The notes beneath the pieces were generated by a model that saw nothing but the letters and a program-made list of their open reading frames with translations, did no database searches and was not told the DNA's origin. A stretch of 64,000 bases of DNA from Rebecca billardiae RCC1528. Its lineage: Eukaryota; Protista; Haptophyta. The stretch covers positions 1,302,001 through 1,366,000 of the forward strand of contig OZ251237.1 of NCBI GenBank assembly GCA_965240325.2, written 5' to 3'. Of the stretch, positions 1 to 44,915 are shown piece by piece. Numbering within the stretch: position 1 is the first letter of the stretch; every line of letters starts with the position of its first letter. The position numbers and the translations under genes are program-made.

Positions 1-177
1 GCTCACGCCAATGATGCCTCCGCCGCAGACGATCACGCGCGGCGAGCCGGCGACGGCCATCGCGAAGAGAGCGGCTGCGACCGTCTTGCGCGTCGGGAGA
101 GCGGCCGCGCGGCCGCCGACGGCTCTGCTTTCGATGCCACGGTCCCGGGCCGGGCGGGGTCCAACCGACCCCGAACG

Positions 178-2229
178 ATGGCGATGGCGGCTTCGCGATG
201 CATCGTGCTCGTCGCGCTCGCGTGCTGCGCGGCCGTGCCCCGGACGGCGGGGCACGGCTGTGCGCGTGCAGTCATGGCGCCGCGAGCTAGTATATCCGCA
301 TCTCGCCGCTCTCGGCCGGCCATGGCCATCACCGCCCGCTCGCGCGGCCGACCGCGCGTGAAGGAGGCGGGCATCTCGAGCCTCGACGACCTAGCCGACG
401 CTGTCGAGGTCGAGCGCGCGCGGCTCGAGGTGGCTGCGGCTGACACGCCCGTGGTGCTTGGCCTACTGGCTCTGCAGGCCCTTCCCCTCCTCGCCGTGCT
501 CGACGAGCGCCTCCGTGTCCCTCTCCTCACGTACGGCTACTTTGGCTCATCCGCCGTTGCCGCAGTGTACCTCGGCGCGCGCGGCGCGCGTGCGCAGGTA
601 GGGCTCGAGTCGCTCCAGCTGAAGAACGCGCTCGCAGCGCCCTTCATCGCCAGCGCGTGGCTCTTCGGCCTGTACTGGGTGCTCAAGTACTCCGACCTCG
701 ATCCGAGCACCCTCTTCGCCATCGTGACCACGCTCTTCTGCGCACTCTCCGCGCAGGACGTGAGTCAGCCGCTGTTCGGGGTCGCGCTGCGCGGAGCGCT
801 GCCGTCGGCGCGCGCGGTGGATCTGGCGAGCTTCGGCGCGAGCGTGCTCGTGGCGCTCGGCCTCACCCTCACGTACGCCACGCACCCCGCCGCGGACACC
901 CTCCCGTCGCTCCTCGCATCCAACGTGCTCGCCCTGTGCGCTGCGGTGAGCGTCGTCTCCGCGGTCGTGCCGGAGTCGTTTGTGGCCGCGGCGGTGCTGG
1001 CGTGCGGTCTCTTCGCGTACGACGTGTTCTGGGTGCGCGCGCCGCGGCGCACGGGGAGCGGCCCACCTTGCACCGCACCCGCGGCATGCCTGACCTGTCC
1101 TGCCCGGCGCGCGCGGTCCTGCCGATGCGCGCGCACCGTTTGTGCGGCGCCGCAGGTGTTCCGCACGGAGGTGATGCAGACCGTCGCGCTCTCGCTCTCA
1201 GCGCCTGTCAAGCTCCAGTTCCCCGCGCCGCCCACCCGCTCCAACCCGTTCTCCATCCTCGGGCTGGGCGACATCGCCGTGCCCGGGCTGCTGGCGAGCA
1301 TGATTGCGCTCTTCGAGGCGCGGCGCGTGCCGGCAGACGGCGCGACGGCCGAGAGTGGCGCGGCCGGCGAGGGCGCGAGCGGTGGGGCCGTGAGCACGTC
1401 CGCGCCGGACGCGCAGCCCGCCGTGCCCGAGCCGTACCTGCCCTCCACCCTCGGCGCGTACGGCGCGGCGCTCACGCTGTGCTTCGGCGTGAACTTTGTC
1501 ACGGCCGCGGGCCAGCCGGCGCTGCTCTACATCGTGCCGTCCCTGCTGGGCACAATGGTCTCGACGAGCGCGGCGCGCGGCGAGCTGGGCGAGCTCGCGG
1601 CGTTCGAGTACGAGCGGCCTGAGCCGCTGGAGATTGAGGGCGACGCGCCGGCGGTCGACGCGATCCGCGCGACGCAGCGCTGGGTGCGCGAGGTGGTCGT
1701 GCCGCTCTCCCTCTGCCCGTACGCGCGCGAGCCGCTCGAGAACGACCGCTACGCGTACGCCGTGAGCAACGCGAGCACGGCGGATGAGTTCATCGACGAC
1801 TTTCTCGCCTCGGCGGAGGACCTCGTGCTCGAGCGCTCGGCGGACGACGTGGCGGCGACCGTGCTGATCGCGCCCGCGCTCGAGTCGTCGCTCAGCCTGG
1901 ACGACTACGCCGCGCTCTCGGCCATGCTGGAGGAGCAGTGCCAGAGCGAGGACGAGCCGATCTGCGACGGCGCGGTCGGCGCGGCGTTCTTTCACCCGCG
2001 GCACGTGTTCGACGAGATGGACGAGGCTGACGCGCTCAACTTTGAGCGGCGCGCACCGTTCCCGTGTGCCACGCTGCTTCGCAGCGCAGACGTCGGCCGC
2101 ATCGTCCGCGCCGGGCTGGCGGAGGGGCGGATCATCTCGAAGGAGATCCAGGCGAGCAACGCGCGCGTGCTCCGCGCGGAGGGCACGCAAGCGATGGCCG
2201 AGCGCCTCGCGGCGCTTCTCGACAACTAG
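178..2229 (+). CDS. Signal peptide peptidase (A22B GxGD aspartic protease) fused to a C-terminal DUF1415-like domain; in-frame intron 1033-1155
   Basis: Removing the GT..CAG intron gives YDVFWVFRTEVM. Also LGLGDIAVPG, QPALLYIVP and multiple hydrophobic helices. C-terminal TQRWVREVVVPLSLCPYA..FFHP..RRAPFP resembles DUF1415. N-terminal signal peptide plus Arg/Ser/Ala-rich transit-like stretch. Confidence 0.85.
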   Translation: MAMAASRCIVLVALACCAAVPRTAGHGCARAVMAPRASISASRRSRPAMAITARSRGRPRVKEAGISSLDDLADAVEVERARLEVAAADTPVVLGLLALQALPLLAVLDERLRVPLLTYGYFGSSAVAAVYLGARGARAQVGLESLQLKNALAAPFIASAWLFGLYWVLKYSDLDPSTLFAIVTTLFCALSAQDVSQPLFGVALRGALPSARAVDLASFGASVLVALGLTLTYATHPAADTLPSLLASNVLALCAAVSVVSAVVPESFVAAAVLACGLFAYDVFWVRAPRRTGSGPPCTAPAACLTCPARRARSCRCARTVCAAPQVFRTEVMQTVALSLSAPVKLQFPAPPTRSNPFSILGLGDIAVPGLLASMIALFEARRVPADGATAESGAAGEGASGGAVSTSAPDAQPAVPEPYLPSTLGAYGAALTLCFGVNFVTAAGQPALLYIVPSLLGTMVSTSAARGELGELAAFEYERPEPLEIEGDAPAVDAIRATQRWVREVVVPLSLCPYAREPLENDRYAYAVSNASTADEFIDDFLASAEDLVLERSADDVAATVLIAPALESSLSLDDYAALSAMLEEQCQSEDEPICDGAVGAAFFHPRHVFDEMDEADALNFERRAPFPCATLLRSADVGRIVRAGLAEGRIISKEIQASNARVLRAEGTQAMAERLAALLDN

Positions 2230-34199: not shown

Positions 34200-34903
34200 A
34201 TGGTCCCGACCCCAGGCCTCCGGGTGGTGATTGGCGCCTTGATCATCAGCCATGCCGTCCTCGCCTCCCTCTCTGACCCCGTGCCCTGCACGCACCCCTT
34301 CTTCATCGCGGCGGTCGAGCCGCCCGCCATCATGATGCAGCCGGGGGCAGCCGCGCTGCACGTCGTCGGCGTGGATCACTGCGGGGACAGCGCCCTGGCC
34401 CTGCCGGCGCAGGCGCTCGTCTTCAACCGCACAGACCTCGCCGCCGACGCGCCCGCCGACGCGCCCGCGCCCTCGGCCATGCGCAGCCTACTCGTCGTGA
34501 GCACATCGCCAGCGGGGCCGTGGACGCATGGCGGCGCGCGCCTCCGCATCGCGCTGCCGGAGGGCGCCATCGGCGCGCCGGGCGAGCTGTCTGTCACGCT
34601 CACGGACGCCGCGCACCAGCGCCTCTCCGCGCCCGTCTCCGTCCGAGTGCTGCCCTCGCCCTCCGTGCGCGCCGTGCTCCCGGCCCGGCTGCCGCTGCAC
34701 GGCGGCGTCGTCCTCACCGTCCTCGGCAACGGCTTCGTGCCGAGCGCGCGCGCGAGCCTCGAGGTGGCGGTGGGCTCGGCGGCGGCGAACGTCACGGCGC
34801 GCGTGAGCGCGCGCTACGTCAACCGCACCACGCTCGTCGCCGACGCGCCGATGCTGCCGACCATCCCGGAGCTCGTGCGCGCGGGCGTCGCGACGAGCGC
34901 GCA

Positions 34904-34937
<34 letters not shown>

Positions 34938-37900
34938 CAGGAGCAGGAGGAGGGCGCGTGGCTCGAGGGCAGCGTGGGCGTGGCGCTCGACGGCGTCTCC
35001 TTCGCCGCGCGCCGCGCCCCCGTCCGCTTCCGCGCGCGCGCGCCGCTGCGCGTGCACTACATGCTCGCCGGCGCGGTCGGCGACCTCGGCTGGTCTGACA
35101 ACTGGAACCGTGCGCGCATGGCGCTCGACCGCGCGCTGCGGCAGCACACGGTCTCGGACGTGGCGGAGCGCGTGGGCGTGGGCGCGGCGGAGGTGGAGGC
35201 GCACGTCGCCGAGCGCTGCGCCGAGGGGTACGACCTCGTCGTCGCCACCGCGTACGCCTACCACGCGGGCGCGGAGGCGGCGCTGCGGCGCGCGCCCGAG
35301 TGCACCGCGCAGCCGGCAGGCGCGCGCACGCACGTCGTGCTGGCGGGCGTGACGGTGCCGCCTCCGGGCGGGCGGGAGGAGGCGGGCGGGCGGATGGCGA
35401 TGGTGTACCCGCGCGTGCACGCGCAGATGTACCTCGCCGGCGTGCTCGCCGGCGCGCACATGCGCGACGCGCTCGGCCCGCAGCTCGCAGGGTACGTAGT
35501 CGCTCACCCGCTGTCGTTCGTGTTGCTCAACGTGAACGCGTTTGCGCTCGGCTGCCGCTCGGCGAACCCGGCGTGCGAGGTGCGCGTGGTGCAGACGGGC
35601 GCGTGGCACAGGGCGTGGGCGGAGGCGATGGCGGCGACCAAGCTGTGGGTCGAGGACGGCGCGCGCGTCGTCGCGCACCACACAGACACGCTCGCCGCGC
35701 TGCGCGTCTTTGCCGAGAGCGGGCCGCGGCCGTGCGCGCGCGCCAAGCCGCGGCCCGCCTACTGCGCGCGCGAGGCCGAGGTGGCCGCGGCGGCGGCGCG
35801 CGGCGAGGCCGACCACGGCGCGAGCATCGGGCTCAACATGGACGGGCGCACGCTCGTGGGCGAGAGCGTGCTCATCTCCGCCACGATGAACTGGGCGCCA
35901 GCGCTTGAGCTCTTCGCGCGCCGAATACTCGGAGGCCGCTGGGTGCGCGGCGCGAGGCATTGGGTGGGCAGCGGGGGCGGCGCCGAGGGCGGCGCCGAGG
36001 GCGGCGCCGAGGGCGACGGGCGCGGCCCCGACGGGAGCGCCGGCTGGAGCACGCTCGACTCGCTGCAGGCGCTCTCGGACACGTCGGCGCGCGTGTCGGA
36101 TGGGGCGCTCGCCGCGCTCGAGGCCGCGCGGCGCGAGCTCGAGGCGAGCGGCGACCGGATCTTCTGCGGCCGGCTGCGGCTGGCGAACGGCACGCGGATC
36201 AGGCCCGGGCCTCTGTGCACGCCGATGGCGTCCGCCGACGCCGACGCCGCCGACGCCGCCGACGGGCTGGCCGAGGGCTCGCGCGCGCACGCCGACGTCG
36301 GCGCGTGCGAGCCGGACGGTGCCGACGACGCGCGCTCGGACGAGCGGCCATGCTGCCTCACAGACCTCGCGCTGCTGTCGATGGACTGGCTCGTCGAGGG
36401 CGCGCGGCCCGCGGCGGGCGCGGCGGAGGCGGCGCGGCGCACCGCCGAGGACTGCAGGCGCGCGGGCCGGGCCGGCGTGGACTGCGACGCGCCGCTCACG
36501 CCGGGGCGGTGGGGCGTGTGGGCGCCTCGAGAGGACGACGACGCTTTGCGCGCCGCGCGCGCGCACGCCGGCGCTCAGCCGGAGGAGGGCGCGCTGATCG
36601 GGCTGCCCCTCGAGCGCTGGGCGTTCACGCCCCCGGCCGAGCAGGACGTGGACTGCCCGCCCGGCCAGGAGAAGTGGCGGCCGCAGGGCCCGGAGGGCGG
36701 CGCGCATTGCCGCCCGCTCTGCGACTGGGGCCTGTACGAGGCCGGCAAGTGCGAAGGGACGTTTGCTGGGCTGCTCGAGTCGCACGCGCGGCTGCGCTGG
36801 TGGCTGCGCACGCTGGGCTCGGTGTGCGCGCTCGGGCTCGTGTGCCTCGGCGCGTTCGTCCTCCTCCGACGGCTGCAGCGCGCGCACTCGGACGAGATGC
36901 AGCGCCGCCAGTGGCTCGCCGACGCGGTGCAGGCGTCACTGACCGCTCGCGCGCGGCTGCAGTACCCATTGCATGTCGTCTCGCTCGTCGACTTCGCCAC
37001 GTTCGGCGCGCTGCTCCCGTTCGAGGCGGTGCGGCAGCGAGGCGCGCACGAGGTGTACGACACGGTCGCGGCCGCGTGCGAGCGGCTCGAGTCAGTCCGG
37101 CTCATCTTCCTCTCGCACCAGGTGGGCGGCGCGCGGGGGCGCGCGCGCCGTGCGGGGGCGCGCGCGCCGCGCGGGGGCGCGTGCGCCGCGCGCGTGGTGT
37201 GGGCGTGCGCGTGGTGCGCGCGGTTGTGCGCGCGGCGGGGATGGGGCGTGTGAGCTTGCGGGCGCGCGCGCGTGCGCGTGCGCGGTGGGCGCGTGGGCGG
37301 GCGAGCGCGCGCGGCCGGCCGGGCGCGCTCGCCCCTCGCGCGGCGCGGCGCAGGGAGGCCTGCTGGCGTCGTTGGCGCCCGCCCAGGCTGCCTCGCCGCC
37401 GGCGACGGCGCGCGCGCGCGCCGACCGCGCGCGCTCCCCGCCAACGCACCGCACCGCCTCCTGCGCGCGCTCCGCGCGCGCGCAGTGGCTGGGGTACGAG
37501 GAGCCGGACCCGGACGGCCTGCACTACACGCTGATGGTGACGACGGCGCGCGCGATCGCCGCCGCCAACGGCTGGGCCGAGGGCGACGTGCTTGTGTGGT
37601 GTGACTACTGCTGCGTGCCGCAGGCGCACCCGACGCTGCAGGCGCTCGCGATCGAGTCGTTGGCTTTTTATGCGAGCCTCGCGCACGCGATGGTGGCGGT
37701 GACGCCGCCCGCGGCGCACACCGACACCGGGCAGAGCTGCGGCCGCGCGAGCTACGCGAGCCGGCTGTGGTGCCGAGCCGAGCAGCTGTGCTTTGTGCTT
37801 GCCAACGGCTCCACCCAGCTGTACGTCGCGCCGTCGGCGAGCGGCTCGGCCGCGCCGGAGCACGCGGACGAGCACTGGCTGGATGACGCGCTGCTCGTCT

Positions 37901-40211
37901 TCGAAGGGCACGCGACGTGCTGCGAGCTGCGCCACGCCGGGCGCGGGCACTGCGACAAGGAGAGCCTGGTGCGCCCGATCCTCGGGCTGTACGGCGAGCT
38001 GTTCATTGCTCACCTCGAGCAGCAGGCTGAGGCGGCGGCGGGCGGCGCGGCCGAGGGGAGCTCCGCAGAGGACTCGGATCACGGCGCGCGATCCAACCGC
38101 CGCGCGAGCGAGATCGCGCCCCTGGCCGAGGAGGTCAGGCGGTTGGCGGCGGGCGCGAGCAAGCGCGACTCTCTGAAAGAGCAGGGCAAGCGCGCGAGCG
38201 GGGGCGGCGGCGGCGCGAGCGCCGGCGGCCTCCGCCCCGCGGCCGAGGCGGCGGCGGCGGGCGGCGCAGCCGACGCAGCAGAGGCACACGGCAGCAACTC
38301 GACGCGCGCGCTCGCGCGCAGCTGCGGCCTCGGCACGCTCCGCCCGTCGTTCTCGTCGCCCGTCTCGCCGTCGGCGCCGCCGCGGCCCGCGGCCGAGGGC
38401 GAGGGCGCGCCGGACCCAAATGCCGGCACAGCCAGCGACGCGGGCGCACTGGACAGCGCGCTGGCGCAGCACGCGGAGGAGGAGGAGGAGGAGGAGGAGG
38501 CGGAGGAGGCGGAGGCGGCGGCGGGAGGAGGCCTCGCTGCCATCAGCCCGGTGGCCGAGGAAGAGCAGCGCGCAGAACCGCCGCCACCACCGCAGCAGCA
38601 GCACGAGGGCCGTGCCAAGTTCTCCGGCGCGCCGTTGGCTGCGGCGGCGACGCTGGCAGCGGCGAGTGCACACCGTCGGCGCGCGCCCAAGTCTCCACGC
38701 GCGAGATCGCTCGATGTCGCCCTCGGCTCCGTCGGCGACGAGTGCGGCGGGCGAGAGTCGCCGACGCCGTGCAGCCGGTGTGACACATCGGCGTGCGCCT
38801 CCGCCCTCGCCTCCGCCCTCCACTCGCACGGCAGCAGCGAGCGCAGCTCAGGGTGCAGCACGCCCTCGTGCGTCGCGAGAAGCCACGACCCTGCGCTCGC
38901 GCCGCCGCCCGCCAACTCGCCGGCCGCCTCGTCGCGAGGCTACCCGGCGCGCGCGGCGATGTCGCGGCAGGGCTCGACACCGATCGCCGCCTCGCCGCTC
39001 CGCGGCTCGCGCTCGAGCTCGCTGTCGTGCGCAGCCGGCTCGGTCGATGCGCAGGGGCTGCGCAGCCGCGTGGACGGCAGCGGCCGCCTCGAGAGCAACG
39101 GGCGCTCGGTCACGCTCTCGAGCTTCCGCTCAGCGCGGACGGCGGAGCGCACGCGCAGGACCAACATGCGCGAGATGCGCCGACGGCTGGTGCGCGCGCG
39201 GCTCGTGCGCGCCGCCTCCCGCGCGTCGTCTCTCTCTCTCTCTCGCGCGCGCGCGCCGCGCGGCCACGCTCACGCGCTCCTCGCGCCCGCCCGCCCCCGC
39301 CGACGGCGCGTGTGCAGCTGGAGAGCAACGAGCAGGAGCGCGCGCGGATGTTTCCGCGAAGCTTCTCCTTCGTCCAGACGGACGGCACCGCGACCGAGCG
39401 CGACCTCTTTGGCGACCTGCTCGCCGAGATGGAGAAGCTCTGCCTGCGCGTGCACCTCGAGTGCCTCGAGGAGGCGGCGGCGGCGAGCGCGGCGGAGGCG
39501 GCGGAGGCGGCGGCTGCCGAGCAGGCGGCCGCGGCGGCGGCGCGCGCGGACACTGCGGAGGGGGCCAACGCCGCCGCGCCGCCCGCGCCGCCCGTGCGGG
39601 CGGATTCGGATTCGGACTCGGACTCGGACTCGGAGGCGGAGGCGGCGGAGGAAGCGACCACACACCTGCTGCTGCCCACGGAGAGGATGACGTCGCCAGG
39701 CCTGAGCTTGAGGGCCCCGCGGAGCCCCGTGCTCCCCACCGCGCCCGCACCCTCGCCCGCTGCCCTTCGGAGGCACGACCCCGACCAGATGGCTCGCCGC
39801 CACTCGCTGCAGCGCGCCAACACGTCGCCCACGACGGGCGCCCAGGTCGAGCGGCTGCTGAGGATGTCCGTGCACCCGCACGACATCGGGCAGCGCCGGC
39901 CGGTCCTCAGCCCGTCGAAGCACACGCCCCCCGGCGCTCGCAGCAAGATGCGCATCCTGCGGGGGGCGCGCGCGTCCGTCGCAGCCTTCACGAGCTGCAA
40001 GTCAACAGTGACCGCGACGGAGGTTGAGACGATGCGCCAGCGCCTCGGCGCGCTCCGCTCTCCCGATGTGCCGTCGCCGCCCGCCTGGCACGGACGGAGT
40101 CGGACGGCCACAGACGGGGAGACGTCCGACGGGCGGCCGGCCACGGATGGAGTCGGACGGCTCCCGCCCCGCTGGAAGCCGAACAAGAATACAGCGGCGC
40201 GCACGCCTTGA
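34200..40211 (+). CDS. Predicted single-pass receptor: signal peptide - IPT/TIG - BMP/PnrA-type ligand-binding domain - TM - HET/TIR-like domain - low-complexity tail; introns 37122-37485 and 39190-39317
   Basis: Three exons joined by GT-AG introns give 1839 aa. BMP-like motifs GDLGW, GYDLVVAT, YLAGVLAG, NVNAFALG..ANP, LLSMDWLVEG. HET-like motifs FLSHQ|W, WCDYCCVPQ, SRLWCRAE. Confidence 0.78.
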
Positions 40212-40797: not shown

Positions 40798-41093
40798 TTC
40801 AAGGGTGACTGGGTGTGAGAGCCGCCTGCACAGCGATGAATGGCGACCGTTTGTAAAATCGTCACTGGAGTACCCCCATAATGTATGTATGCGGGTATTC
40901 ACCAGATTGGGGCGCGACAGATCTCAGTCATCTGACTGCGGACTTGTTTACCCAGCTGACCCGCATATTCCGATATCCGAGGCCGTGGACCAATCGGCAG
41001 TCTCGGGCCTATTTACAGCTTGGTTGGGTACTTGGGTTGGGCGGCGTCTTCGGCGCCTCGTCCCCGGCCGATCGAACGGCCGCCGTCGTCGAG

Positions 41094-44000
41094 ATGCTGC
41101 CGGCGGTCCGCGCGGCGGCGGCGCGCGCGTCGGCGCCGGTTCTCGGCGCGCTCCCCGTCGTGGGCGTGTGCGCAGCTCGCGTGCTCCCGCTGGCTCTCCG
41201 CGGCCGCGCCTTCTCGAGCTCGAGCGGCTCGGCGCCGCGCGCGCTTGTCCTGAACGCCGGCTCCTCATCGATCAAGTACGGCCTCTTCACCATCGACGCG
41301 GGCGCGAGCGGCGGCGCGACGGCGGTGTGCTCGGGGCTGGTGGAGAAGATCGGCCTGCAGGGCGGCCTCATCACGCACAAGACGGCCGACGGCGCCAAGA
41401 CCACGATGCAGGGCGACCTCGTCGACCACTCGAGCGCGCTCACCAAGGTGGTCGAGATCCTCACGGGCGCCGGCGGGCCGATCGCGGACGTGAAGGAGAT
41501 CGGCGTGGTGGGGCACCGCGTGGTGCACGGCGGGATGACGCTCACCGCGCCCGCTGTCCTCGACGACAAGGTCGAGGCGGAGATCGAGCGCTGCGTCCCG
41601 CTCGCGCCGCTGCACAACCCGGCGAACCTGAACGCGATCCGCGTCGCGCGCTCCATCTTCCCGGCGCCGCACGTGGCGATCTTCGACACGGCGTTCCACG
41701 CGGACATGCCGCCCGAGTCGTACACGTACGCGCTGCCGCGCGAGCTCAAGGAGCACCACGGCGTGCGCCGCTACGGCTTCCACGGCACGTCGTACATCTA
41801 CGTGCTCGGCAAGGCGGCCGAGCAGCTCGGCGTGCCCAAGGAGTCGCTCAACGCGATCATCTGCCACCTGGGCAACGGCGCGAGCATGGCGGTGGTGAAG
41901 AACGGCAAGTGCCTGGACACGACGATGGGGCTCACGCCGCTCGAGGGCCTCGTGATGGGCACGCGCGCGGGCGACGTCGACGGCGGCGTCCTCTCGTTCA
42001 TGGCGGGCCACCTCGGCTGGGACGCGCACAAGATTGACACGGTGCTCAACAAGCAGTCCGGGCTGCTCGGGCTGTGCGGCACGTCGGACTTCCGCTCGGT
42101 GCTGGCCGCGTGCGAGGCGGGCGACGAGCACGCCATGCTCGCCAAGCAGGTCTTCGTGCAGCGCATCCGCAAGTACGTCGGCGCGTACATGGTCAAGCTG
42201 GGCGGGCAGGTCGACGCGCTCGTCTTCACCGGCGGGATTGGCGAGAACTCGGCCGAGCTGCGCGCCGAGGTGTGCGACGGGCTCGCCTCGTTCGGCATCG
42301 CGCTGGACGCGTCGAAGAACGCGCGCGCGCTGCCCGAGGTGCAGACGAGCTACGCGAGCGTGCGCGCGCTCGTGATCCCGACCAACGAGGAGCTCAGCAT
42401 CGCGCTCCAGTCGGCGGAGGCGGTGAGCTTGGTCGAGCCGGCGCGCGCCAAGGGCGGCGCGCGCGGCGCGGCCGACGGCGGCGCGGACGCGCAGAAGAAG
42501 CACAAGATCGTGCGGCGCGCGTCGTTCGACCCGTCGCTGGTGAAGCGGCCCGGACCGACGGCGCCGTCGAGCCCGCGGCAGGACGACCTCGCGCTGCAGG
42601 CCGCGGCCGACGCGGCGCAGGCGCAGATGGCCGACTCGCCCGCCGTCGAGCCGCTCGGGCATGCGCTGTTTGTGGAGGCGGAGGGCGCGTCCGGCCTGCT
42701 CGAGGCGGCGCTCCTCGCGTCGGTGCGGCCGCGCGTGACGAAGCTCGGGTACTTCCAGCTGCTCTCGTACGGCCACGGCCACGACCGCAAGCTCGAGTAC
42801 CTCCGCTCGATCGACAAGCTCGGCCTCGCCGCCGATCCGGCGGACGCGATGGTCGGGATGACGTTTGACGAGGCGATGCACTTGTACGCGTCCTCGGACG
42901 GCCGCTCCGACGAGATCTTCGACAAGATCATCGACAAGTTCGAGGCGTACGCGAAGGGGCGCGACTTCGTGATGGTCTCGGGCGCGCGCGTCCCCGCGCG
43001 CTCCACCTCCGTCGGCGACGCGCCCGGCTCCTTCGCCTTCTACTCCTCGCTCGCGAGCGCGCTCGACATCCCTGTGCTCGTCGTGCAGGACGCGGCGCAG
43101 GGGCGGCCGGCGACGACCAACCTCTCGCGCACCGCGCTCGACGGGGAGCCGGTGGAGACGGAGCGGCTGATGGCGCACCTCACCGCGATCAAGGCGGGGT
43201 GCGAGGCCGCCTCCGTCCGCCTCGCCGGCGCGATCATGACCGGCGTGCCCACCGCCAACTACCCGAGCGTCGCGGCGGAGCTGCGCGGCGCGATGGCGGA
43301 GCACGGCATCTTCCCGGTCGCGCTGCTGCCGCTGGAGGCGCGCGTGAACCAGATCACGATGTCCGACGTCGCCGCGGCGCTGGACGCGAAGGTGCTGTAC
43401 GGCGAGCGGAACCTGGACTCGCAGGTCGTGCGCAACGTCGAGGTCGGCACGAAGCAGGTGCCGCAGCTCCTCGGCGCGCTGCAGGAGAAGCCGGGCTCGC
43501 TGACGATCACGTCGGCGACGCGCTCCGAGGTGCTCATGTCGATGCTGCTCGCGACCCAGTCGCGCAACGTGCCGCTGCACCCGGGGATCCTGCTCACCGG
43601 CGCGAAGGAGCTGCCGGAGGTGGTGTCGCAGGTGCTCTCCGGGCTCGACGTCGTGGGCAAGCCCGTGCTGCTCACCGAGAAGACCGCGTACCAGTCGGCG
43701 ATCGCGCTGGACAAGCTGCTGAGCGCAGCGCACGCGCTCGCCAACACGCCGTCGCTCACCAGCCACCGCTCCGCCGCCAAGCTCGAGGCCGCCGAGTCGC
43801 TGCTCGAGATCCACATGGACAAGAAGTTCGAGGCGGCGATGGTGCAGGACAACCCGGCGCCGGACGTCACGCCCATCATCTTCAAGCACACCATGTTCTC
43901 CGCCGCGCGCGTCAACAGGCAGCACATCGTGCTGCCTGAGGGGAACGACGTGCGCGTGCTCACCGCCGCGGGCGAGCTGCTCTCGCGCGGCCTCTGCGAG

Positions 44001-44915
44001 ATCACGCTGCTCGGCAACGAGGACCAGGTGCTCTCGCTCGCGGAGAAGGCGCACGTCGACCTGAGCCGCGCGGCCATCATCAACCCGAAGCGCGCGCTGC
44101 TCGACGAGCCCACCGAGTGGGCCGAGGCGTTGGTTCAGGGCATGCACGACGCGCGCAAGGCCAAGGGCATGACGGAGCCCGAGGCGCGCTCGTTGCTCAT
44201 GCACGACGAGGCCTACTTTGGCACGATGATGATGATGAACGGGCTCGCGGACGGGATGGTGAGCGGCGCGTGCCACTCGACGGCGAACACGATGCGCCCC
44301 GCGCTGCAGCTCATCAAGATGGCCCAGGGCTACTCGATGGTCTCCTCCGTCTTCTTCATGCTGCTGCGCGACCGAGTGTTCGTGTACGGCGACTGCGCCA
44401 TCAACGTCGACCCGAGCGCAGAGGAGCTCGCCGAGATCGCGCTCGCGAGCGCGGGCACCGCGCGCGCGTTCGGCATCACGCCGCGCATCGCGATGCTCAG
44501 CTACGCCACCGGCGACTCGAACCAGGGGCCGATGATCGACAAGGTGCGCAAGGCGACCGAGCTCGCGCGCGAGCGCGCGCCGGCCGAGCTGATCGAGGGG
44601 CCGATCCAGTTTGACGCGGCGGTCGACCCGGCGGTCGCCGCGGTCAAGTTCAAGGGGCAGGACTCGCCCGTCGCGGGGAAGGCGACGGTGTGCATCTTCC
44701 CCGACCTGAACGCGGGCAACAACGCGTACAAGGCCGTGCAGCAGGCGTCCAAGGCGAGCGCGGTCGGCCCGATCATGCAGGGCCTGCGCCTGCCGGTGAA
44801 CGACCTCTCCCGCGGCTGCACCGTCGACGACATCGTCAACACCGTCGTCTGCACCGCGCTGCAGTCGATCGCCGCGAAGGAGGCGGCCGCGCGCGGCGGC
44901 GGCGGCAGCAAATGA
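41094..44915 (+). CDS. ackA-pta: Acetate kinase - phosphate acetyltransferase fusion with mitochondrial-type presequence
   Basis: AckA: NAGSSSIKY, GHRVVHGG, PLHNPAN, FDTAFH, YGFHGTS, HLGNGAS, FTGGIGEN, PTNEE. Pta: IVLPEG, EGPIQFDAA, FPDLNAGNNAYK, QGLRLPVNDLSRG. Single uninterrupted ORF. Confidence 0.95.
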   Translation: MLPAVRAAAARASAPVLGALPVVGVCAARVLPLALRGRAFSSSSGSAPRALVLNAGSSSIKYGLFTIDAGASGGATAVCSGLVEKIGLQGGLITHKTADGAKTTMQGDLVDHSSALTKVVEILTGAGGPIADVKEIGVVGHRVVHGGMTLTAPAVLDDKVEAEIERCVPLAPLHNPANLNAIRVARSIFPAPHVAIFDTAFHADMPPESYTYALPRELKEHHGVRRYGFHGTSYIYVLGKAAEQLGVPKESLNAIICHLGNGASMAVVKNGKCLDTTMGLTPLEGLVMGTRAGDVDGGVLSFMAGHLGWDAHKIDTVLNKQSGLLGLCGTSDFRSVLAACEAGDEHAMLAKQVFVQRIRKYVGAYMVKLGGQVDALVFTGGIGENSAELRAEVCDGLASFGIALDASKNARALPEVQTSYASVRALVIPTNEELSIALQSAEAVSLVEPARAKGGARGAADGGADAQKKHKIVRRASFDPSLVKRPGPTAPSSPRQDDLALQAAADAAQAQMADSPAVEPLGHALFVEAEGASGLLEAALLASVRPRVTKLGYFQLLSYGHGHDRKLEYLRSIDKLGLAADPADAMVGMTFDEAMHLYASSDGRSDEIFDKIIDKFEAYAKGRDFVMVSGARVPARSTSVGDAPGSFAFYSSLASALDIPVLVVQDAAQGRPATTNLSRTALDGEPVETERLMAHLTAIKAGCEAASVRLAGAIMTGVPTANYPSVAAELRGAMAEHGIFPVALLPLEARVNQITMSDVAAALDAKVLYGERNLDSQVVRNVEVGTKQVPQLLGALQEKPGSLTITSATRSEVLMSMLLATQSRNVPLHPGILLTGAKELPEVVSQVLSGLDVVGKPVLLTEKTAYQSAIALDKLLSAAHALANTPSLTSHRSAAKLEAAESLLEIHMDKKFEAAMVQDNPAPDVTPIIFKHTMFSAARVNRQHIVLPEGNDVRVLTAAGELLSRGLCEITLLGNEDQVLSLAEKAHVDLSRAAIINPKRALLDEPTEWAEALVQGMHDARKAKGMTEPEARSLLMHDEAYFGTMMMMNGLADGMVSGACHSTANTMRPALQLIKMAQGYSMVSSVFFMLLRDRVFVYGDCAINVDPSAEELAEIALASAGTARAFGITPRIAMLSYATGDSNQGPMIDKVRKATELARERAPAELIEGPIQFDAAVDPAVAAVKFKGQDSPVAGKATVCIFPDLNAGNNAYKAVQQASKASAVGPIMQGLRLPVNDLSRGCTVDDIVNTVVCTALQSIAAKEAAARGGGGSK

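What the first reader, a model, noticed from the sequence alone, without database searches (positions are those of the whole stretch)
34200..40211. Candidate novel receptor: bacterial BMP/PnrA ligand-binding ectodomain coupled through one TM helix to a HET/TIR-like effector domain
Seen: the ORF track splits this locus into three ORFs, but GT-AG introns (37122-37485, 39190-39317) join them into a 1839-aa protein. Order: signal peptide; IPT/TIG-like repeat (PSVRAVLP..GGVVLTVLGNGF, ~34660); BMP-family domain ~35046-36400 (GDLGW, GYDLVVAT, YLAGVLAG, NVNAFALG..ANP, RIFCG, LLSMDWLVEG); TM ~36800-36870; cytoplasmic domain with FLSHQ|W (completed only by splicing), WCDYCCVPQ and YASRLWCRAE. Known: BMP/PnrA/Med proteins are bacterial ABC-transporter solute-binding lipoproteins, often for purine nucleosides. 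SH..W, WxD..C..Q and RxW..E are hallmarks of HET (PF06985) domains, which are TIR-related cell-death effectors with a conserved Glu. Inference: a cell-surface sensor that detects extracellular nucleosides or similar metabolites and triggers a TIR-like (possibly NAD-consuming) signalling or death output, in effect a Toll-like receptor built from a bacterial binding protein. I know of no described BMP-TM-HET architecture.
Basis: partly seen in the sequence, partly recalled or inferred. Interest (0 to 1): 0.9.

Follow-up and report, generated by a model that had tools for sequence, protein, structure and literature searches.

The report
Algal purine-sensor receptor with HET/TIR-like output
This is a real three-exon gene of a GC-rich alga for a cell-surface receptor that joins a bacterial-type BMP binding domain to a HET/TIR-like domain inside the cell. 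It belongs to a large, apparently undescribed family of modular receptors in marine microalgae.

Summary
Exons 34200-37121, 37486-39189 and 39318-40211 encode an 1839-aa type I membrane protein. Its order is signal peptide, TIG domain, BMP binding domain (Pfam 46 bits; E 1.4e-15 to the purine-binding proteins 3s99 and AtzT), Cys-rich stalk, one TM helix, then a conserved ~320-aa cytoplasmic module.

Codon-position GC and exact collinearity with unsplit homologues support both introns.

The cytoplasmic module is not unique. It defines a family of at least 1113 50%-identity clusters, found in diatoms, a dinoflagellate transcriptome and marine metagenomes. Named members are all "hypothetical protein". 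In relatives the same module follows Cache, ANF-receptor, several solute-binding-protein types, LRR or Cys-rich ectodomains. No BMP ectodomain was seen among 150 relatives or 81 loci.

The only recurrent Pfam match is HET, nearly always below threshold. A confident AlphaFold model has TIR domains as its top PDB neighbours, but not significantly. The window keeps every invariant residue, including the Glu of WCRAE.

Most likely this is a ligand-gated chemosensory receptor for a purine-like heterocycle with a TIR-superfamily output. NADase activity and a death role are untested. A similar binding-domain-TM-TIR protein was reported in Gephyrocapsa huxleyi in 2025.

The parts
34200..37121 (+). Exon 1 (974 aa). 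It runs from the first ATG to the donor CAG|GT and ends in ...IFLSHQ.
   Evidence: GC3 is at least 0.91 in this frame. The last 114 residues align to family profile positions 317-430.
34200..34274 (+). Signal-peptide-like hydrophobic N-terminus (residues about 1-25).
   Evidence: Kyte-Doolittle scan, residues 4-25. No dedicated signal-peptide predictor was run.
34659..34859 (+). IPT/TIG domain (residues 154-220).
   Evidence: PF01833, E 6.4e-6, 26.5 bits against a cutoff of 20.9.
35031..36401 (+). BMP/PnrA-type solute-binding (Venus-flytrap) ectodomain, residues 278-734. It carries two low-complexity inserts, at 35976-36014 and 36234-36266.
   Evidence: PF02608, 46.4 bits, E 3.5e-12, two stretches. 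E 1.4e-15 to 3s99 and 6pi5 over residues 278-516. The C-terminal motifs RIFCG and LLSMDWLVEG are located.
36651..36758 (+). Membrane-proximal Cys-rich stalk (DCPPGQ...KCEG).
   Evidence: Read directly from the sequence. Exon 1 residues 805-974 align with homologue P0017. Relatives carry NCD3G or Ephrin_rec_like stalks.
36801..36875 (+). Single transmembrane helix (residues 868-892), followed by RRLQRAH (positive inside).
   Evidence: Hydropathy scan. A TM segment lies at the same distance (median 85 aa before SHQW) in 74 of 81 homologues.
36876..37121 (+). Juxtamembrane helix, pre-core strands and strand beta-A (IFLSHQ) of the cytoplasmic module.
   Evidence: Profile positions about 345-430. 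The AlphaFold model of homologue P0002 shows helix 2-29, strands 38-42 and 64-67, and beta-A at 82-87.
37122..37485 (+). Intron 1 (364 nt, GT..AG).
   Evidence: Codon periodicity is lost here. The homologue profile is continuous from position 430 to 431 across the junction.
37486..38034 (+). Exon 2, conserved part: the HET/TIR-like core. It contains W-LGYEEPDPDG, VWCDYCCVPQ, SYASRLWCRAEQ with the invariant Glu codon at 37780-37782, and TCCELRHAGRGHCD.
   Evidence: E 1e-88 to the family profile. There are 1113 cluster representatives at E<=1e-3. All 17 invariant columns of the core alignment are kept.
38035..39189 (+). Exon 2, low-complexity insert of 385 aa rich in A/S/G/R. The family profile lacks it.
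   Evidence: The profile has only about 15 positions here. GC3 is about 0.93 over most of it and weaker over 38400-38760.
39190..39317 (+). Intron 2 (128 nt, GT..AG). It shifts the frame from 1 to 0.
   Evidence: Splice sites. The frame switches in GC3. Exon 3 aligns to the next profile block. The exact boundaries are less certain than for intron 1.
39318..40211 (+). Exon 3. It holds the conserved C-terminal beta-hairpin of the module (MFPRSFSF...RDLFGDL, 39348-39419), a 225-aa low-complexity tail, and the stop codon TGA at 40209-40211.
   Evidence: E 1.2e-11 to profile positions 620-683. F283, P284, L300, F301 and G302 are invariant in the family.

Best explanation
The locus encodes a type I plasma-membrane receptor of a GC-rich marine alga. 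It is one member of a large modular receptor family.

Proposed mechanism:
1. Outside the cell, a TIG domain and a BMP-type two-lobed binding domain capture a small planar heterocycle. This is most likely a purine base or a close analogue.
2. Lobe closure is passed through a Cys-rich stalk, one TM helix and a long juxtamembrane helix.
3. The signal reaches a ~320-aa cytoplasmic module whose core is a flavodoxin-like alpha/beta domain related to HET, and through HET to TIR.
4. Ligand binding is proposed to change the self-association of these cytoplasmic domains. By analogy with TIR enzymes, that would switch on a nucleotide (NAD+-type) cleaving or cyclising activity centred on the invariant Glu of WCRAE, which would make a second messenger.

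In this reading the family is a general chemosensory system with interchangeable sensor domains and one common output. It is not specifically a death receptor.

Shown here: the gene structure, the domain identities, the topology signals, the family and its ectodomain diversity, and the conservation of every invariant residue.

Inferred: ligand class, oligomerisation control, enzymatic output and physiological role.
For: - Gene model: splice sites, codon-position GC, and exact collinearity of the three pieces with the family profile.
- Ectodomain: Bmp passes the Pfam cutoff. E 1.4e-15 to the purine-binding SBPs 3s99 and AtzT 6pi5.
- Binding site: I mapped the AtzT site (PMC6834077) by hand onto the alignment. 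Both stacking aromatics are kept (Tyr45->Trp of GDLGW; Trp194->Trp of GAWHR). Asn169 is kept. The HTD motif matches adenine-bound 3s99. Ser97->Ala and Glu165->Phe differ.
- Topology: hydrophobic N-terminus and a TM followed by basic residues. The same TM spacing occurs in 74 of 81 homologues.
- Family: 1113 clusters at E<=1e-3 and 68 at E<=1e-30. Named members come from diatoms and a dinoflagellate transcriptome, all "hypothetical". Ectodomains are Ephrin_rec_like, dCache_1, ANF_receptor, Peripla_BP_6, SBP_bac_1/8, Phosphonate-bd, NMT1+CUB+EGF and LRR.
- Output domain: HET is the only recurrent Pfam hit. It matches 19 of 44 members at E<=1; the best is 23.8 bits against a cutoff of 22.5. In P0009 the match covers profile positions 4-93.
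- Structure: the AlphaFold model has pLDDT 96.2 and pTM 0.92. The core-only model has TIR domains as PDB ranks 1-3, plus SPARTA, ThsA, RPP1, RUN1 and nucleoside deoxyribosyltransferase. TIR, NDT and SLOG proteins also appear among viral structures.
- Conservation: 27 invariant columns, all present in the window protein, including the Glu on the predicted alpha-C helix.
- Published background: the remote HET-TIR homology, including the conserved Glu, is published, as are HET homologues in stramenopiles and haptophytes (PMC4986451, PMC9153377).
Against: - No structural match is significant. The best Foldseek E is 0.028 and all TM-scores are below 0.45. Generic flavodoxin-fold enzymes score about as well as TIRs.
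- There is no Pfam TIR hit and no PADLOC hit. A profile search of PDB sequences found nothing.
- The window's own pieces give no HET hit, even at E<=10.
- No enzymatic activity has been established even for fungal HET domains (PMC10197012).
- The family has extras absent from TIR and HET: N- and C-terminal strands forming a cap, and an invariant C-C-H-C cluster. These could mean a different chemistry.
- Two of the hydrogen-bonding residues of the AtzT purine site are replaced, so the ligand is uncertain.
- There is no transcript evidence for this gene. Part of the 385-aa low-complexity stretch might be intronic.
Confidence: 0.6

Rival explanations
1. This is a Toll-like danger or immune receptor. 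Extracellular nucleosides or purines released by lysed or infected neighbours are sensed, and the HET/TIR-like domain triggers NAD+ depletion and regulated cell death.
For: - HET domains are sufficient for cell death in fungi, and TIR domains are NADases in immunity (PMC10197012, PMC4986451).
- The invariant Glu is kept.
- LRR ectodomains occur in some relatives.
- In G. huxleyi, a binding-domain-TM-TIR gene is induced 0.5 h after virus addition (PMC12489294).
Against: - Most identifiable ectodomains in the family are nutrient or metabolite sensors: amino-acid, sugar/polyamine, phosphonate, thiamine-precursor-type SBPs and Cache. That fits chemosensing better than pathogen recognition.
- No death or NADase activity has been shown for any member.
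- The closest solved BMP relatives bind free bases, not nucleosides.
Confidence: 0.2
2. This is a nutrient-capture receptor or transceptor. The anchored binding protein scavenges purines at the cell surface for uptake or endocytosis. The conserved cytoplasmic module is a non-catalytic sorting or scaffolding domain.
For: - BMP proteins are transport binding proteins in bacteria (Pfam name; PMC6834077).
- The family's ectodomains are mostly transporter-type SBPs.
- TIR domains of animal receptors act as scaffolds, not enzymes (PMC4986451).
Against: - A ~320-aa module with 27 invariant residues looks like an active site rather than a sorting signal. Those residues include polar and charged ones clustered in three TIR-like blocks (S-H-Q-W, W-x-D...Q, R-x-W-C-R-A-E).
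- No transporter domain is fused or adjacent.
Confidence: 0.12
3. This is an artefact: two neighbouring genes, a pseudogene, or chance ORFs in GC-rich DNA wrongly joined.
For: - Long chance ORFs occur in all six frames here.
- There is no transcript evidence.
- No close homologue of exon 1 was found by three word-based searches or a metagenome scan.
Against: - The conserved module is split by intron 1 exactly between profile positions 430 and 431. Its last block lies in exon 3. Neither half would be a complete domain alone.
- Strong frame-specific GC3 switches at the proposed junctions.
- All family-invariant residues are intact.
Confidence: 0.03

Closest known systems
Toll-like / IL-1 receptors (ectodomain - one TM - cytoplasmic TIR)
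   Same: - Type I single-pass topology.
- A ligand-binding ectodomain.
- A flavodoxin-like cytoplasmic signalling domain of the TIR superfamily, with an F-[IL]-S-H type first block and a W-C-x-x-E type third block. The motif comparison is from my own knowledge. TIRs are the top Foldseek neighbours.
   Different: - No Pfam TIR match.
- The ectodomain is a solute-binding protein, not LRR or Ig.
- The module has an extra cap subdomain, a C-C-H-C cluster and a long juxtamembrane helix.
- Animal receptor TIRs lack the catalytic Glu function.
Fungal HET domain proteins (PF06985; HET-E, TOL, etc.)
   Same: HET is the only Pfam family repeatedly matched. The block order is the same: S-H/Y-x-W, W-x-D-x-x-C/S-I-x-Q, then W-x-x-x-E. 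HET homologues have been reported in stramenopiles and haptophytes (PMC4986451).
   Different: - Only 1 of 44 members reaches the HET gathering score. HMMER never aligns the third block.
- Fungal HET proteins are cytosolic, often at the N-terminus of NLRs. They are not membrane receptors with sensor ectodomains.
Gephyrocapsa huxleyi cogent1101_i1 (extracellular leucine-binding/EGF-like region - TM - TIR; PMC12489294)
   Same: It is an algal single-pass protein with a binding-protein-like ectodomain and an intracellular TIR-type domain that keeps the Glu. It is described as a candidate signalling receptor.
   Different: - It is from a haptophyte.
- Its ectodomain is of the leucine-binding type, not BMP.
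- Its TIR was called by HHsuite against Pfam TIR families.
BMP/PnrA family solute-binding proteins (3s99; AtzT 6pi5)
   Same: - Same fold family by sequence.
- The aromatic sandwich and the HTD motif of the purine site are kept.
- The C-terminal BMP motifs are present.
   Different: - It is not a lipoprotein or periplasmic partner of an ABC transporter.
- It is fused to a TIG domain, a stalk, a TM helix and a signalling domain.
- It has two low-complexity inserts.
- Ser97 and Glu165 of the AtzT site are replaced.
Venus-flytrap-coupled single-pass receptors (natriuretic-peptide receptor guanylyl cyclases, Venus kinase receptors)
   Same: The logic is the same. A bacterial-type periplasmic-binding-protein fold outside is coupled through one TM helix to an enzyme domain inside. 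ANF_receptor ectodomains occur in this very family. Venus kinase receptors are described in PMC4026697 (listed).
   Different: The output is a HET/TIR-like domain instead of a cyclase or kinase. The sensor is of the BMP type (cluster B-I SBP) rather than type I PBP/ANF.

Membership tests
BMP/PnrA solute-binding proteins (PF02608) | Sequence match to the family model above the curated threshold. | tested here: met
   46.4 bits against a cutoff of 24.1, E 3.5e-12. NCBIfam gives only a weak ABC_BMP_B6 hit: 22.6 bits against a cutoff of 400.
BMP/PnrA solute-binding proteins (PF02608) | Homology to solved two-lobed BMP structures, across both lobes. | tested here: met
   E 1.4e-15 to 3s99 and 6pi5 over residues 278-516, with a weak continuation at 544-591. 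The C-terminal motifs RIFCG and LLSMDWLVEG are present. No structure model of this domain was made.
BMP/PnrA solute-binding proteins (PF02608) | Conserved purine or nucleoside binding-site residues. | tested here: inconclusive
   Compared with AtzT on the alignment. Tyr45->Trp, Trp194->Trp and Asn169->Asn are kept. Asn218/Asn220->His/Asp, as in adenine-bound 3s99. Ser97->Ala and Glu165->Phe are changed. The mapping is my own and rests on an alignment at about 25-30% identity.
BMP/PnrA solute-binding proteins (PF02608) | Lipoprotein or periplasmic partner of an ABC transporter. | tested here: not met
   The domain sits inside a 1839-aa eukaryotic TM protein. No lipobox context and no ABC genes are nearby.
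HET domain (PF06985) | Match to the Pfam model at or above the gathering score. | tested here: not met
   The window pieces give no hit even at E<=10. Among relatives, 19 of 44 hit at E<=1, and only P0011 reaches 23.8 bits against the cutoff of 22.5.
HET domain (PF06985) | Three conserved blocks in order, the last carrying the conserved Glu. | tested here: inconclusive
   HMMER aligns blocks 1-2 (profile 4-93 in P0009; 45-105 in others). Block 3 (RLWCRAE) is matched only by eye, from my recollection of the HET motif.
HET domain (PF06985) | Cell-death effector activity. | not testable with these tools
   This needs expression assays.
TIR domain superfamily | Match to Pfam TIR models or to bacterial defence TIR models. 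| tested here: not met
   No TIR family appears. PADLOC gives nothing recurrent. A PDB profile search finds nothing.
TIR domain superfamily | Flavodoxin-like beta-A to alpha-E fold with TIR structures as nearest neighbours. | tested here: inconclusive
   The core model has pLDDT 91.8. PDB ranks 1-3 are TIRs: 8p2l_I (E 0.028, probability 0.75), 7xoz and 4c6t_B. TM-scores are 0.30-0.41, and azoreductases and lumazine synthases score similarly.
TIR domain superfamily | Conserved catalytic Glu on alpha-C. | tested here: inconclusive
   An invariant Glu (window codon 37780-37782) lies in the predicted helix after beta-C. Equivalence to the TIR Glu rests on topology and motif, not on a significant superposition.
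TIR domain superfamily | NAD+ (or nucleic-acid) cleaving activity dependent on self-association. | not testable with these tools
   This is a biochemical assay.
New algal 'sensor-TM-HET-like' receptor family (defined here by alignments A1-A3) | TM helix about 85 aa upstream, the S-H-Q-W, W-x-D-x-x-x-x-P-Q and R-x-W-C-R-A-E blocks, T-C-C-x-x-x-H...C-D, and the F-P-x-x-F...L-F-G hairpin. | tested here: met
   The three window pieces score E 1e-20, 1e-88 and 1e-11 to the profile, in order. All invariant columns are kept.

The most novel reading that the evidence does not exclude
The HET-like module is a ligand-gated TIR-type enzyme, and this family is a principal chemosensory receptor system of marine stramenopiles and dinoflagellates. 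Interchangeable bacterial-type sensor domains (here a purine-binding BMP domain) would convert extracellular metabolite binding into NAD-derived second messengers. That would be a eukaryotic signalling logic distinct from kinases, cyclases and GPCRs. It would also give the first biochemical handle on what HET domains do.
Probability: 0.2. Interest if true: 0.85.

Novelty: new variant of a known kind. Interest (0 to 1): 0.62.

Why it matters
Marine microalgae must sense dissolved metabolites, neighbours and pathogens, yet few of their receptors are known. Diatom LRR receptors have been noted to lack any recognisable signalling domain (PMC2939053).

Here one conserved cytoplasmic module sits behind many different sensor domains in over a thousand sequence clusters. 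That makes it a candidate for the missing output domain.

Its kinship to HET and TIR links algal sensing to a domain family central to immunity in animals, plants, bacteria and fungi. The BMP member also offers a receptor with a guessable ligand class, purine-like molecules, so the output chemistry becomes directly testable. The biochemical activity of HET domains is still unknown (PMC10197012), and this family could give a route to it.

Tried and rejected
- Word-index protein searches with exon 1, with its BMP region, and with the BMP N-lobe alone all returned nothing. The Ala-rich composition probably swamps the word filter. So I could not find the nearest BMP relatives, test for a bacterial origin, or build an alignment to model the ectodomain.
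- A metagenome scan with the BMP N-lobe found no relative.
- None of the 150 best family members or the 81 fetched loci carries a BMP-like ectodomain or the same stalk.
- The family profile found no relatives in viral contigs.
- Its single hit in prokaryotic genomes (L001) is a chimeric contig. A eukaryotic fragment there runs in frame into bacterial fmt-rsmB. I reject it as a bacterial homologue.
- A PDB sequence-profile search and PADLOC gave nothing useful.
- Foldseek with the full 317-aa model gave only noise. Trimming to the core brought TIRs to the top but not to significance.
- There is no paralogue in the window. The neighbours are unrelated housekeeping genes.
- Literature searches for HET or TIR-like receptors in algae found only the papers cited here. 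One of these searches was too broad to be informative.
- The supplement of the G. huxleyi paper was not available.
- The organism was not identified. Named relatives are diatoms and one dinoflagellate transcriptome, at no more than 49% identity.
- I searched the exon pieces separately throughout and did not join them.
Full report
**Observation**

The window is eukaryotic-looking DNA of 60-78% GC. Stop-free frames are common on both strands, for example a 799-aa ORF antisense to the locus, so open frames alone carry no weight.

- The proposed introns have canonical ends: 37122-37485, CAG|GTGGGC...GCGCAG|TGG, and 39190-39317, CTG|GTGCGC...TGTGCAG|CTG.
- Third-position GC is at least 0.91 in frame 0 from 34200 to about 37120.
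- It collapses to a flat 0.85 inside intron 1.
- It resumes at about 0.93 in frame 1 from 37486, more weakly over 38400-38760.
- It switches back to frame 0 at about 39300 and stays there until the stop at 40209-40211.

**Splicing confirmed by homology**

An exhaustive HMMER search with the first 210 residues of exon 2 found 1113 cluster representatives at E<=1e-3. Of these, 591 are at E<=1e-10 and 68 at E<=1e-30. The best identities are 46-49%.

In those proteins the sequence matching the end of exon 1 stops exactly one residue before the sequence matching the start of exon 2. Examples are P0001 (365-467 | 468-658) and P0006 (426-527 | 528-700).

A profile of 54 full-length relatives aligns the pieces in order:
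- Exon 1 residues 861-974 match positions 317-430.
- Exon 2 residues 1-183 match positions 431-605 (E 1e-88).
- Exon 3 residues 5-72 match positions 620-683 (E 1e-11).

So the conserved module is split by both introns and is complete only in the spliced product. This excludes the two-gene reading.

The one soft spot is a 385-aa A/S/G/R-rich stretch (38035-39189) that has no counterpart in the family. Its GC3 says coding over most of its length, but only transcripts can settle it.

**Ectodomain**

- Residues 4-25 are hydrophobic.
- Residues 154-220 match TIG above threshold.
- Residues 278-734 are a BMP-family binding domain. Pfam gives 46.4 bits against a cutoff of 24.1. phmmer gives E 1.4e-15 to PDB 3s99 and to AtzT 6pi5.

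According to the AtzT paper, both solved proteins are purine-base binders: guanine at Kd about 110 nM for AtzT, and adenine in 3s99 (PMC6834077).

I placed the published AtzT site residues on the alignment:
- The two stacking aromatics are kept (Trp in GDLGW, Trp in GAWHR).
- Asn169 is kept.
- The HTD motif equals that of 3s99.
- Ser97 and Glu165 are replaced by Ala and Phe.

A planar heterocyclic ligand is therefore a reasonable guess. "Nucleoside" is not specifically supported. The mapping is my own and rests on a low-identity alignment.

A Cys-rich stalk precedes a single TM helix (residues 868-892) followed by RRLQR.

**Cytoplasmic module**

An alignment of 44 relatives (A2) has 27 invariant columns, grouped as follows:
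- S-H-Q-W at the end of the first core strand
- W-x-D...P-Q after the second
- Y-x-x-R-x-W-C-R-A-E on the helix after the third
- a T-C-C-x-x-x-H...C-D cluster
- a terminal F-P-x-x-F...L-F-G hairpin

Every one is present in the window protein.

HET (PF06985) is the only Pfam family hit repeatedly. It matches 19 of 44 members at E<=1. One member reaches 23.8 bits against the cutoff of 22.5, and in P0009 the match spans profile positions 4-93. The window's own pieces give no HET hit, and no TIR model is hit by any member.

AlphaFold2 on the closest compact relative (P0002, 49% identical in the core) gave pLDDT 96.2 and pTM 0.92. The model shows a long juxtamembrane helix, a beta-alpha-beta core, and a small sheet built from pre-core strands and the terminal hairpin.

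- Foldseek with the whole module found nothing.
- With a core-only model (pLDDT 91.8), PDB ranks 1-3 are TIR domains: SARM1/TIR-1, RPPT and RPS4. SPARTA, ThsA, RPP1, RUN1, TIR-STING and nucleoside 2'-deoxyribosyltransferase follow.
- All of these have E>=0.028 and TM<0.45, and generic flavodoxin-fold enzymes are interleaved with them.
- The viral library gave the same picture.

Published work already links HET to TIR by HHpred and jackhmmer, including the conserved Glu. It also notes HET homologues in stramenopiles and haptophytes (PMC4986451, PMC9153377).

I therefore rate "HET-related member of the TIR superfamily" as probable, about 0.7. It is not proven.

**The family**

Pfam scans of full-length relatives show the same module behind many ectodomains:
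- Ephrin_rec_like Cys-rich repeats (8 of 54)
- dCache_1 (5 of 54)
- ANF_receptor (4 of 54)
- Peripla_BP_6 (3 of 54)
- SBP_bac_8 (3 of 54)
- SBP_bac_1 (2 of 54)
- Phosphonate-bd (2 of 54)
- NMT1 with CUB and EGF
- LRR
- NCD3G stalks

Of 81 relatives with enough upstream sequence, 74 have a TM-like segment a median of 85 residues before S-H-Q-W.

Named members come from the diatoms Skeletonema menzelii and Thalassiosira sp. and from an Amphidinium transcriptome. All are labelled hypothetical. The rest are marine metagenome or MMETSP sequences.

No BMP ectodomain was found among the 150 best relatives or the 81 metagenome loci. No close homologue of exon 1 was found anywhere. The BMP member is thus rare or lineage-specific.

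No true prokaryotic or viral member was found. The single "bacterial" hit is a chimeric contig.

**Mechanism**

The best reading is a modular chemoreceptor. A bacterial-type binding domain outside is coupled through one TM and a juxtamembrane helix to a common HET/TIR-like output domain. By analogy with TIR enzymes, its activity would depend on ligand-controlled self-association and on the invariant Glu.

This is inference. No activity is known even for fungal HET domains (PMC10197012). The family-specific cap and the Cys/His cluster could mean different chemistry.

LRR members exist, and a G. huxleyi binding-domain-TM-TIR gene is induced within 0.5 h of virus addition (PMC12489294). But the predominance of nutrient-type sensors favours general sensing.

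**Novelty**

The specific BMP-TM-HET-like combination and the family as a whole appear undescribed in the literature I could search. The concept of an algal single-pass receptor with a binding-protein ectodomain and a TIR-type tail was published in 2025 for one haptophyte gene. HET homologues in these lineages were noted in 2014.

I therefore class it as a new variant of a known kind, of moderately high interest.

**Surroundings**

The neighbours are ordinary eukaryotic genes with no evident link to the receptor:
- signal peptide peptidase
- FAD monooxygenase
- GH10
- an acetate kinase-phosphotransacetylase fusion immediately downstream
- P450
- RPC4
- patatin

Noticed in passing
window 40881-44915 (+): A single 1344-aa ORF fuses acetate kinase (residues 120-511) to a full-length phosphotransacetylase (residues 608-1332), with a 119-aa N-terminal extension. 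NCBIfam gives E 2e-133 and 8e-191. A fused ACK-PTA in a eukaryotic alga may be worth a look.
   Followed up: partly
L001:21-1124 (CAJWHT010000148.1, Desulfobacteraceae MAG): The ORF begins with about 150 aa of the eukaryotic HET-like receptor module (FIFFSHQWLGW...VWVDYVSIPQ). It continues in frame as bacterial methionyl-tRNA formyltransferase, followed by rsmB. This is a chimeric assembly at a contig end in a public MAG, not a bacterial homologue.
   Followed up: yes
window 37915-37956 (TCCELRHAGRGHCD) and 37711-37725 (AAHTD): Cys, Cys, His and Cys are invariant within 12 residues across the family, together with an invariant His upstream. This may be a metal site. I know of no counterpart in TIR or HET domains. 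It remains unexplained.
   Followed up: no
window 38035-39189: A 385-aa low-complexity insert (A 21%, S 15%, G 11%, R 11%, with a poly-Glu run at 38476-38514) lies between the core and the terminal hairpin of a domain that is otherwise compact. Several long relatives (P0052, P0109, P0114) also match the core in two separate stretches, which suggests an insertion, but at a different point: their first stretch ends near core residue 116-119.
   Followed up: partly
window 1-2226 (+): One open frame carries both a signal peptide peptidase domain (Peptidase_A22B, E 2e-36) and DUF1415 (E 2e-27). This is either a fusion or two genes read through in GC-rich DNA. The frame runs off the window start.
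   Followed up: no
window 34488-36887 (-): A 799-aa antisense ORF lies across the BMP exon, with many other ORFs over 100 aa in all frames. They are by-products of the 76% GC content, not genes. GC3 periodicity identifies the sense frame only.
   Followed up: yes
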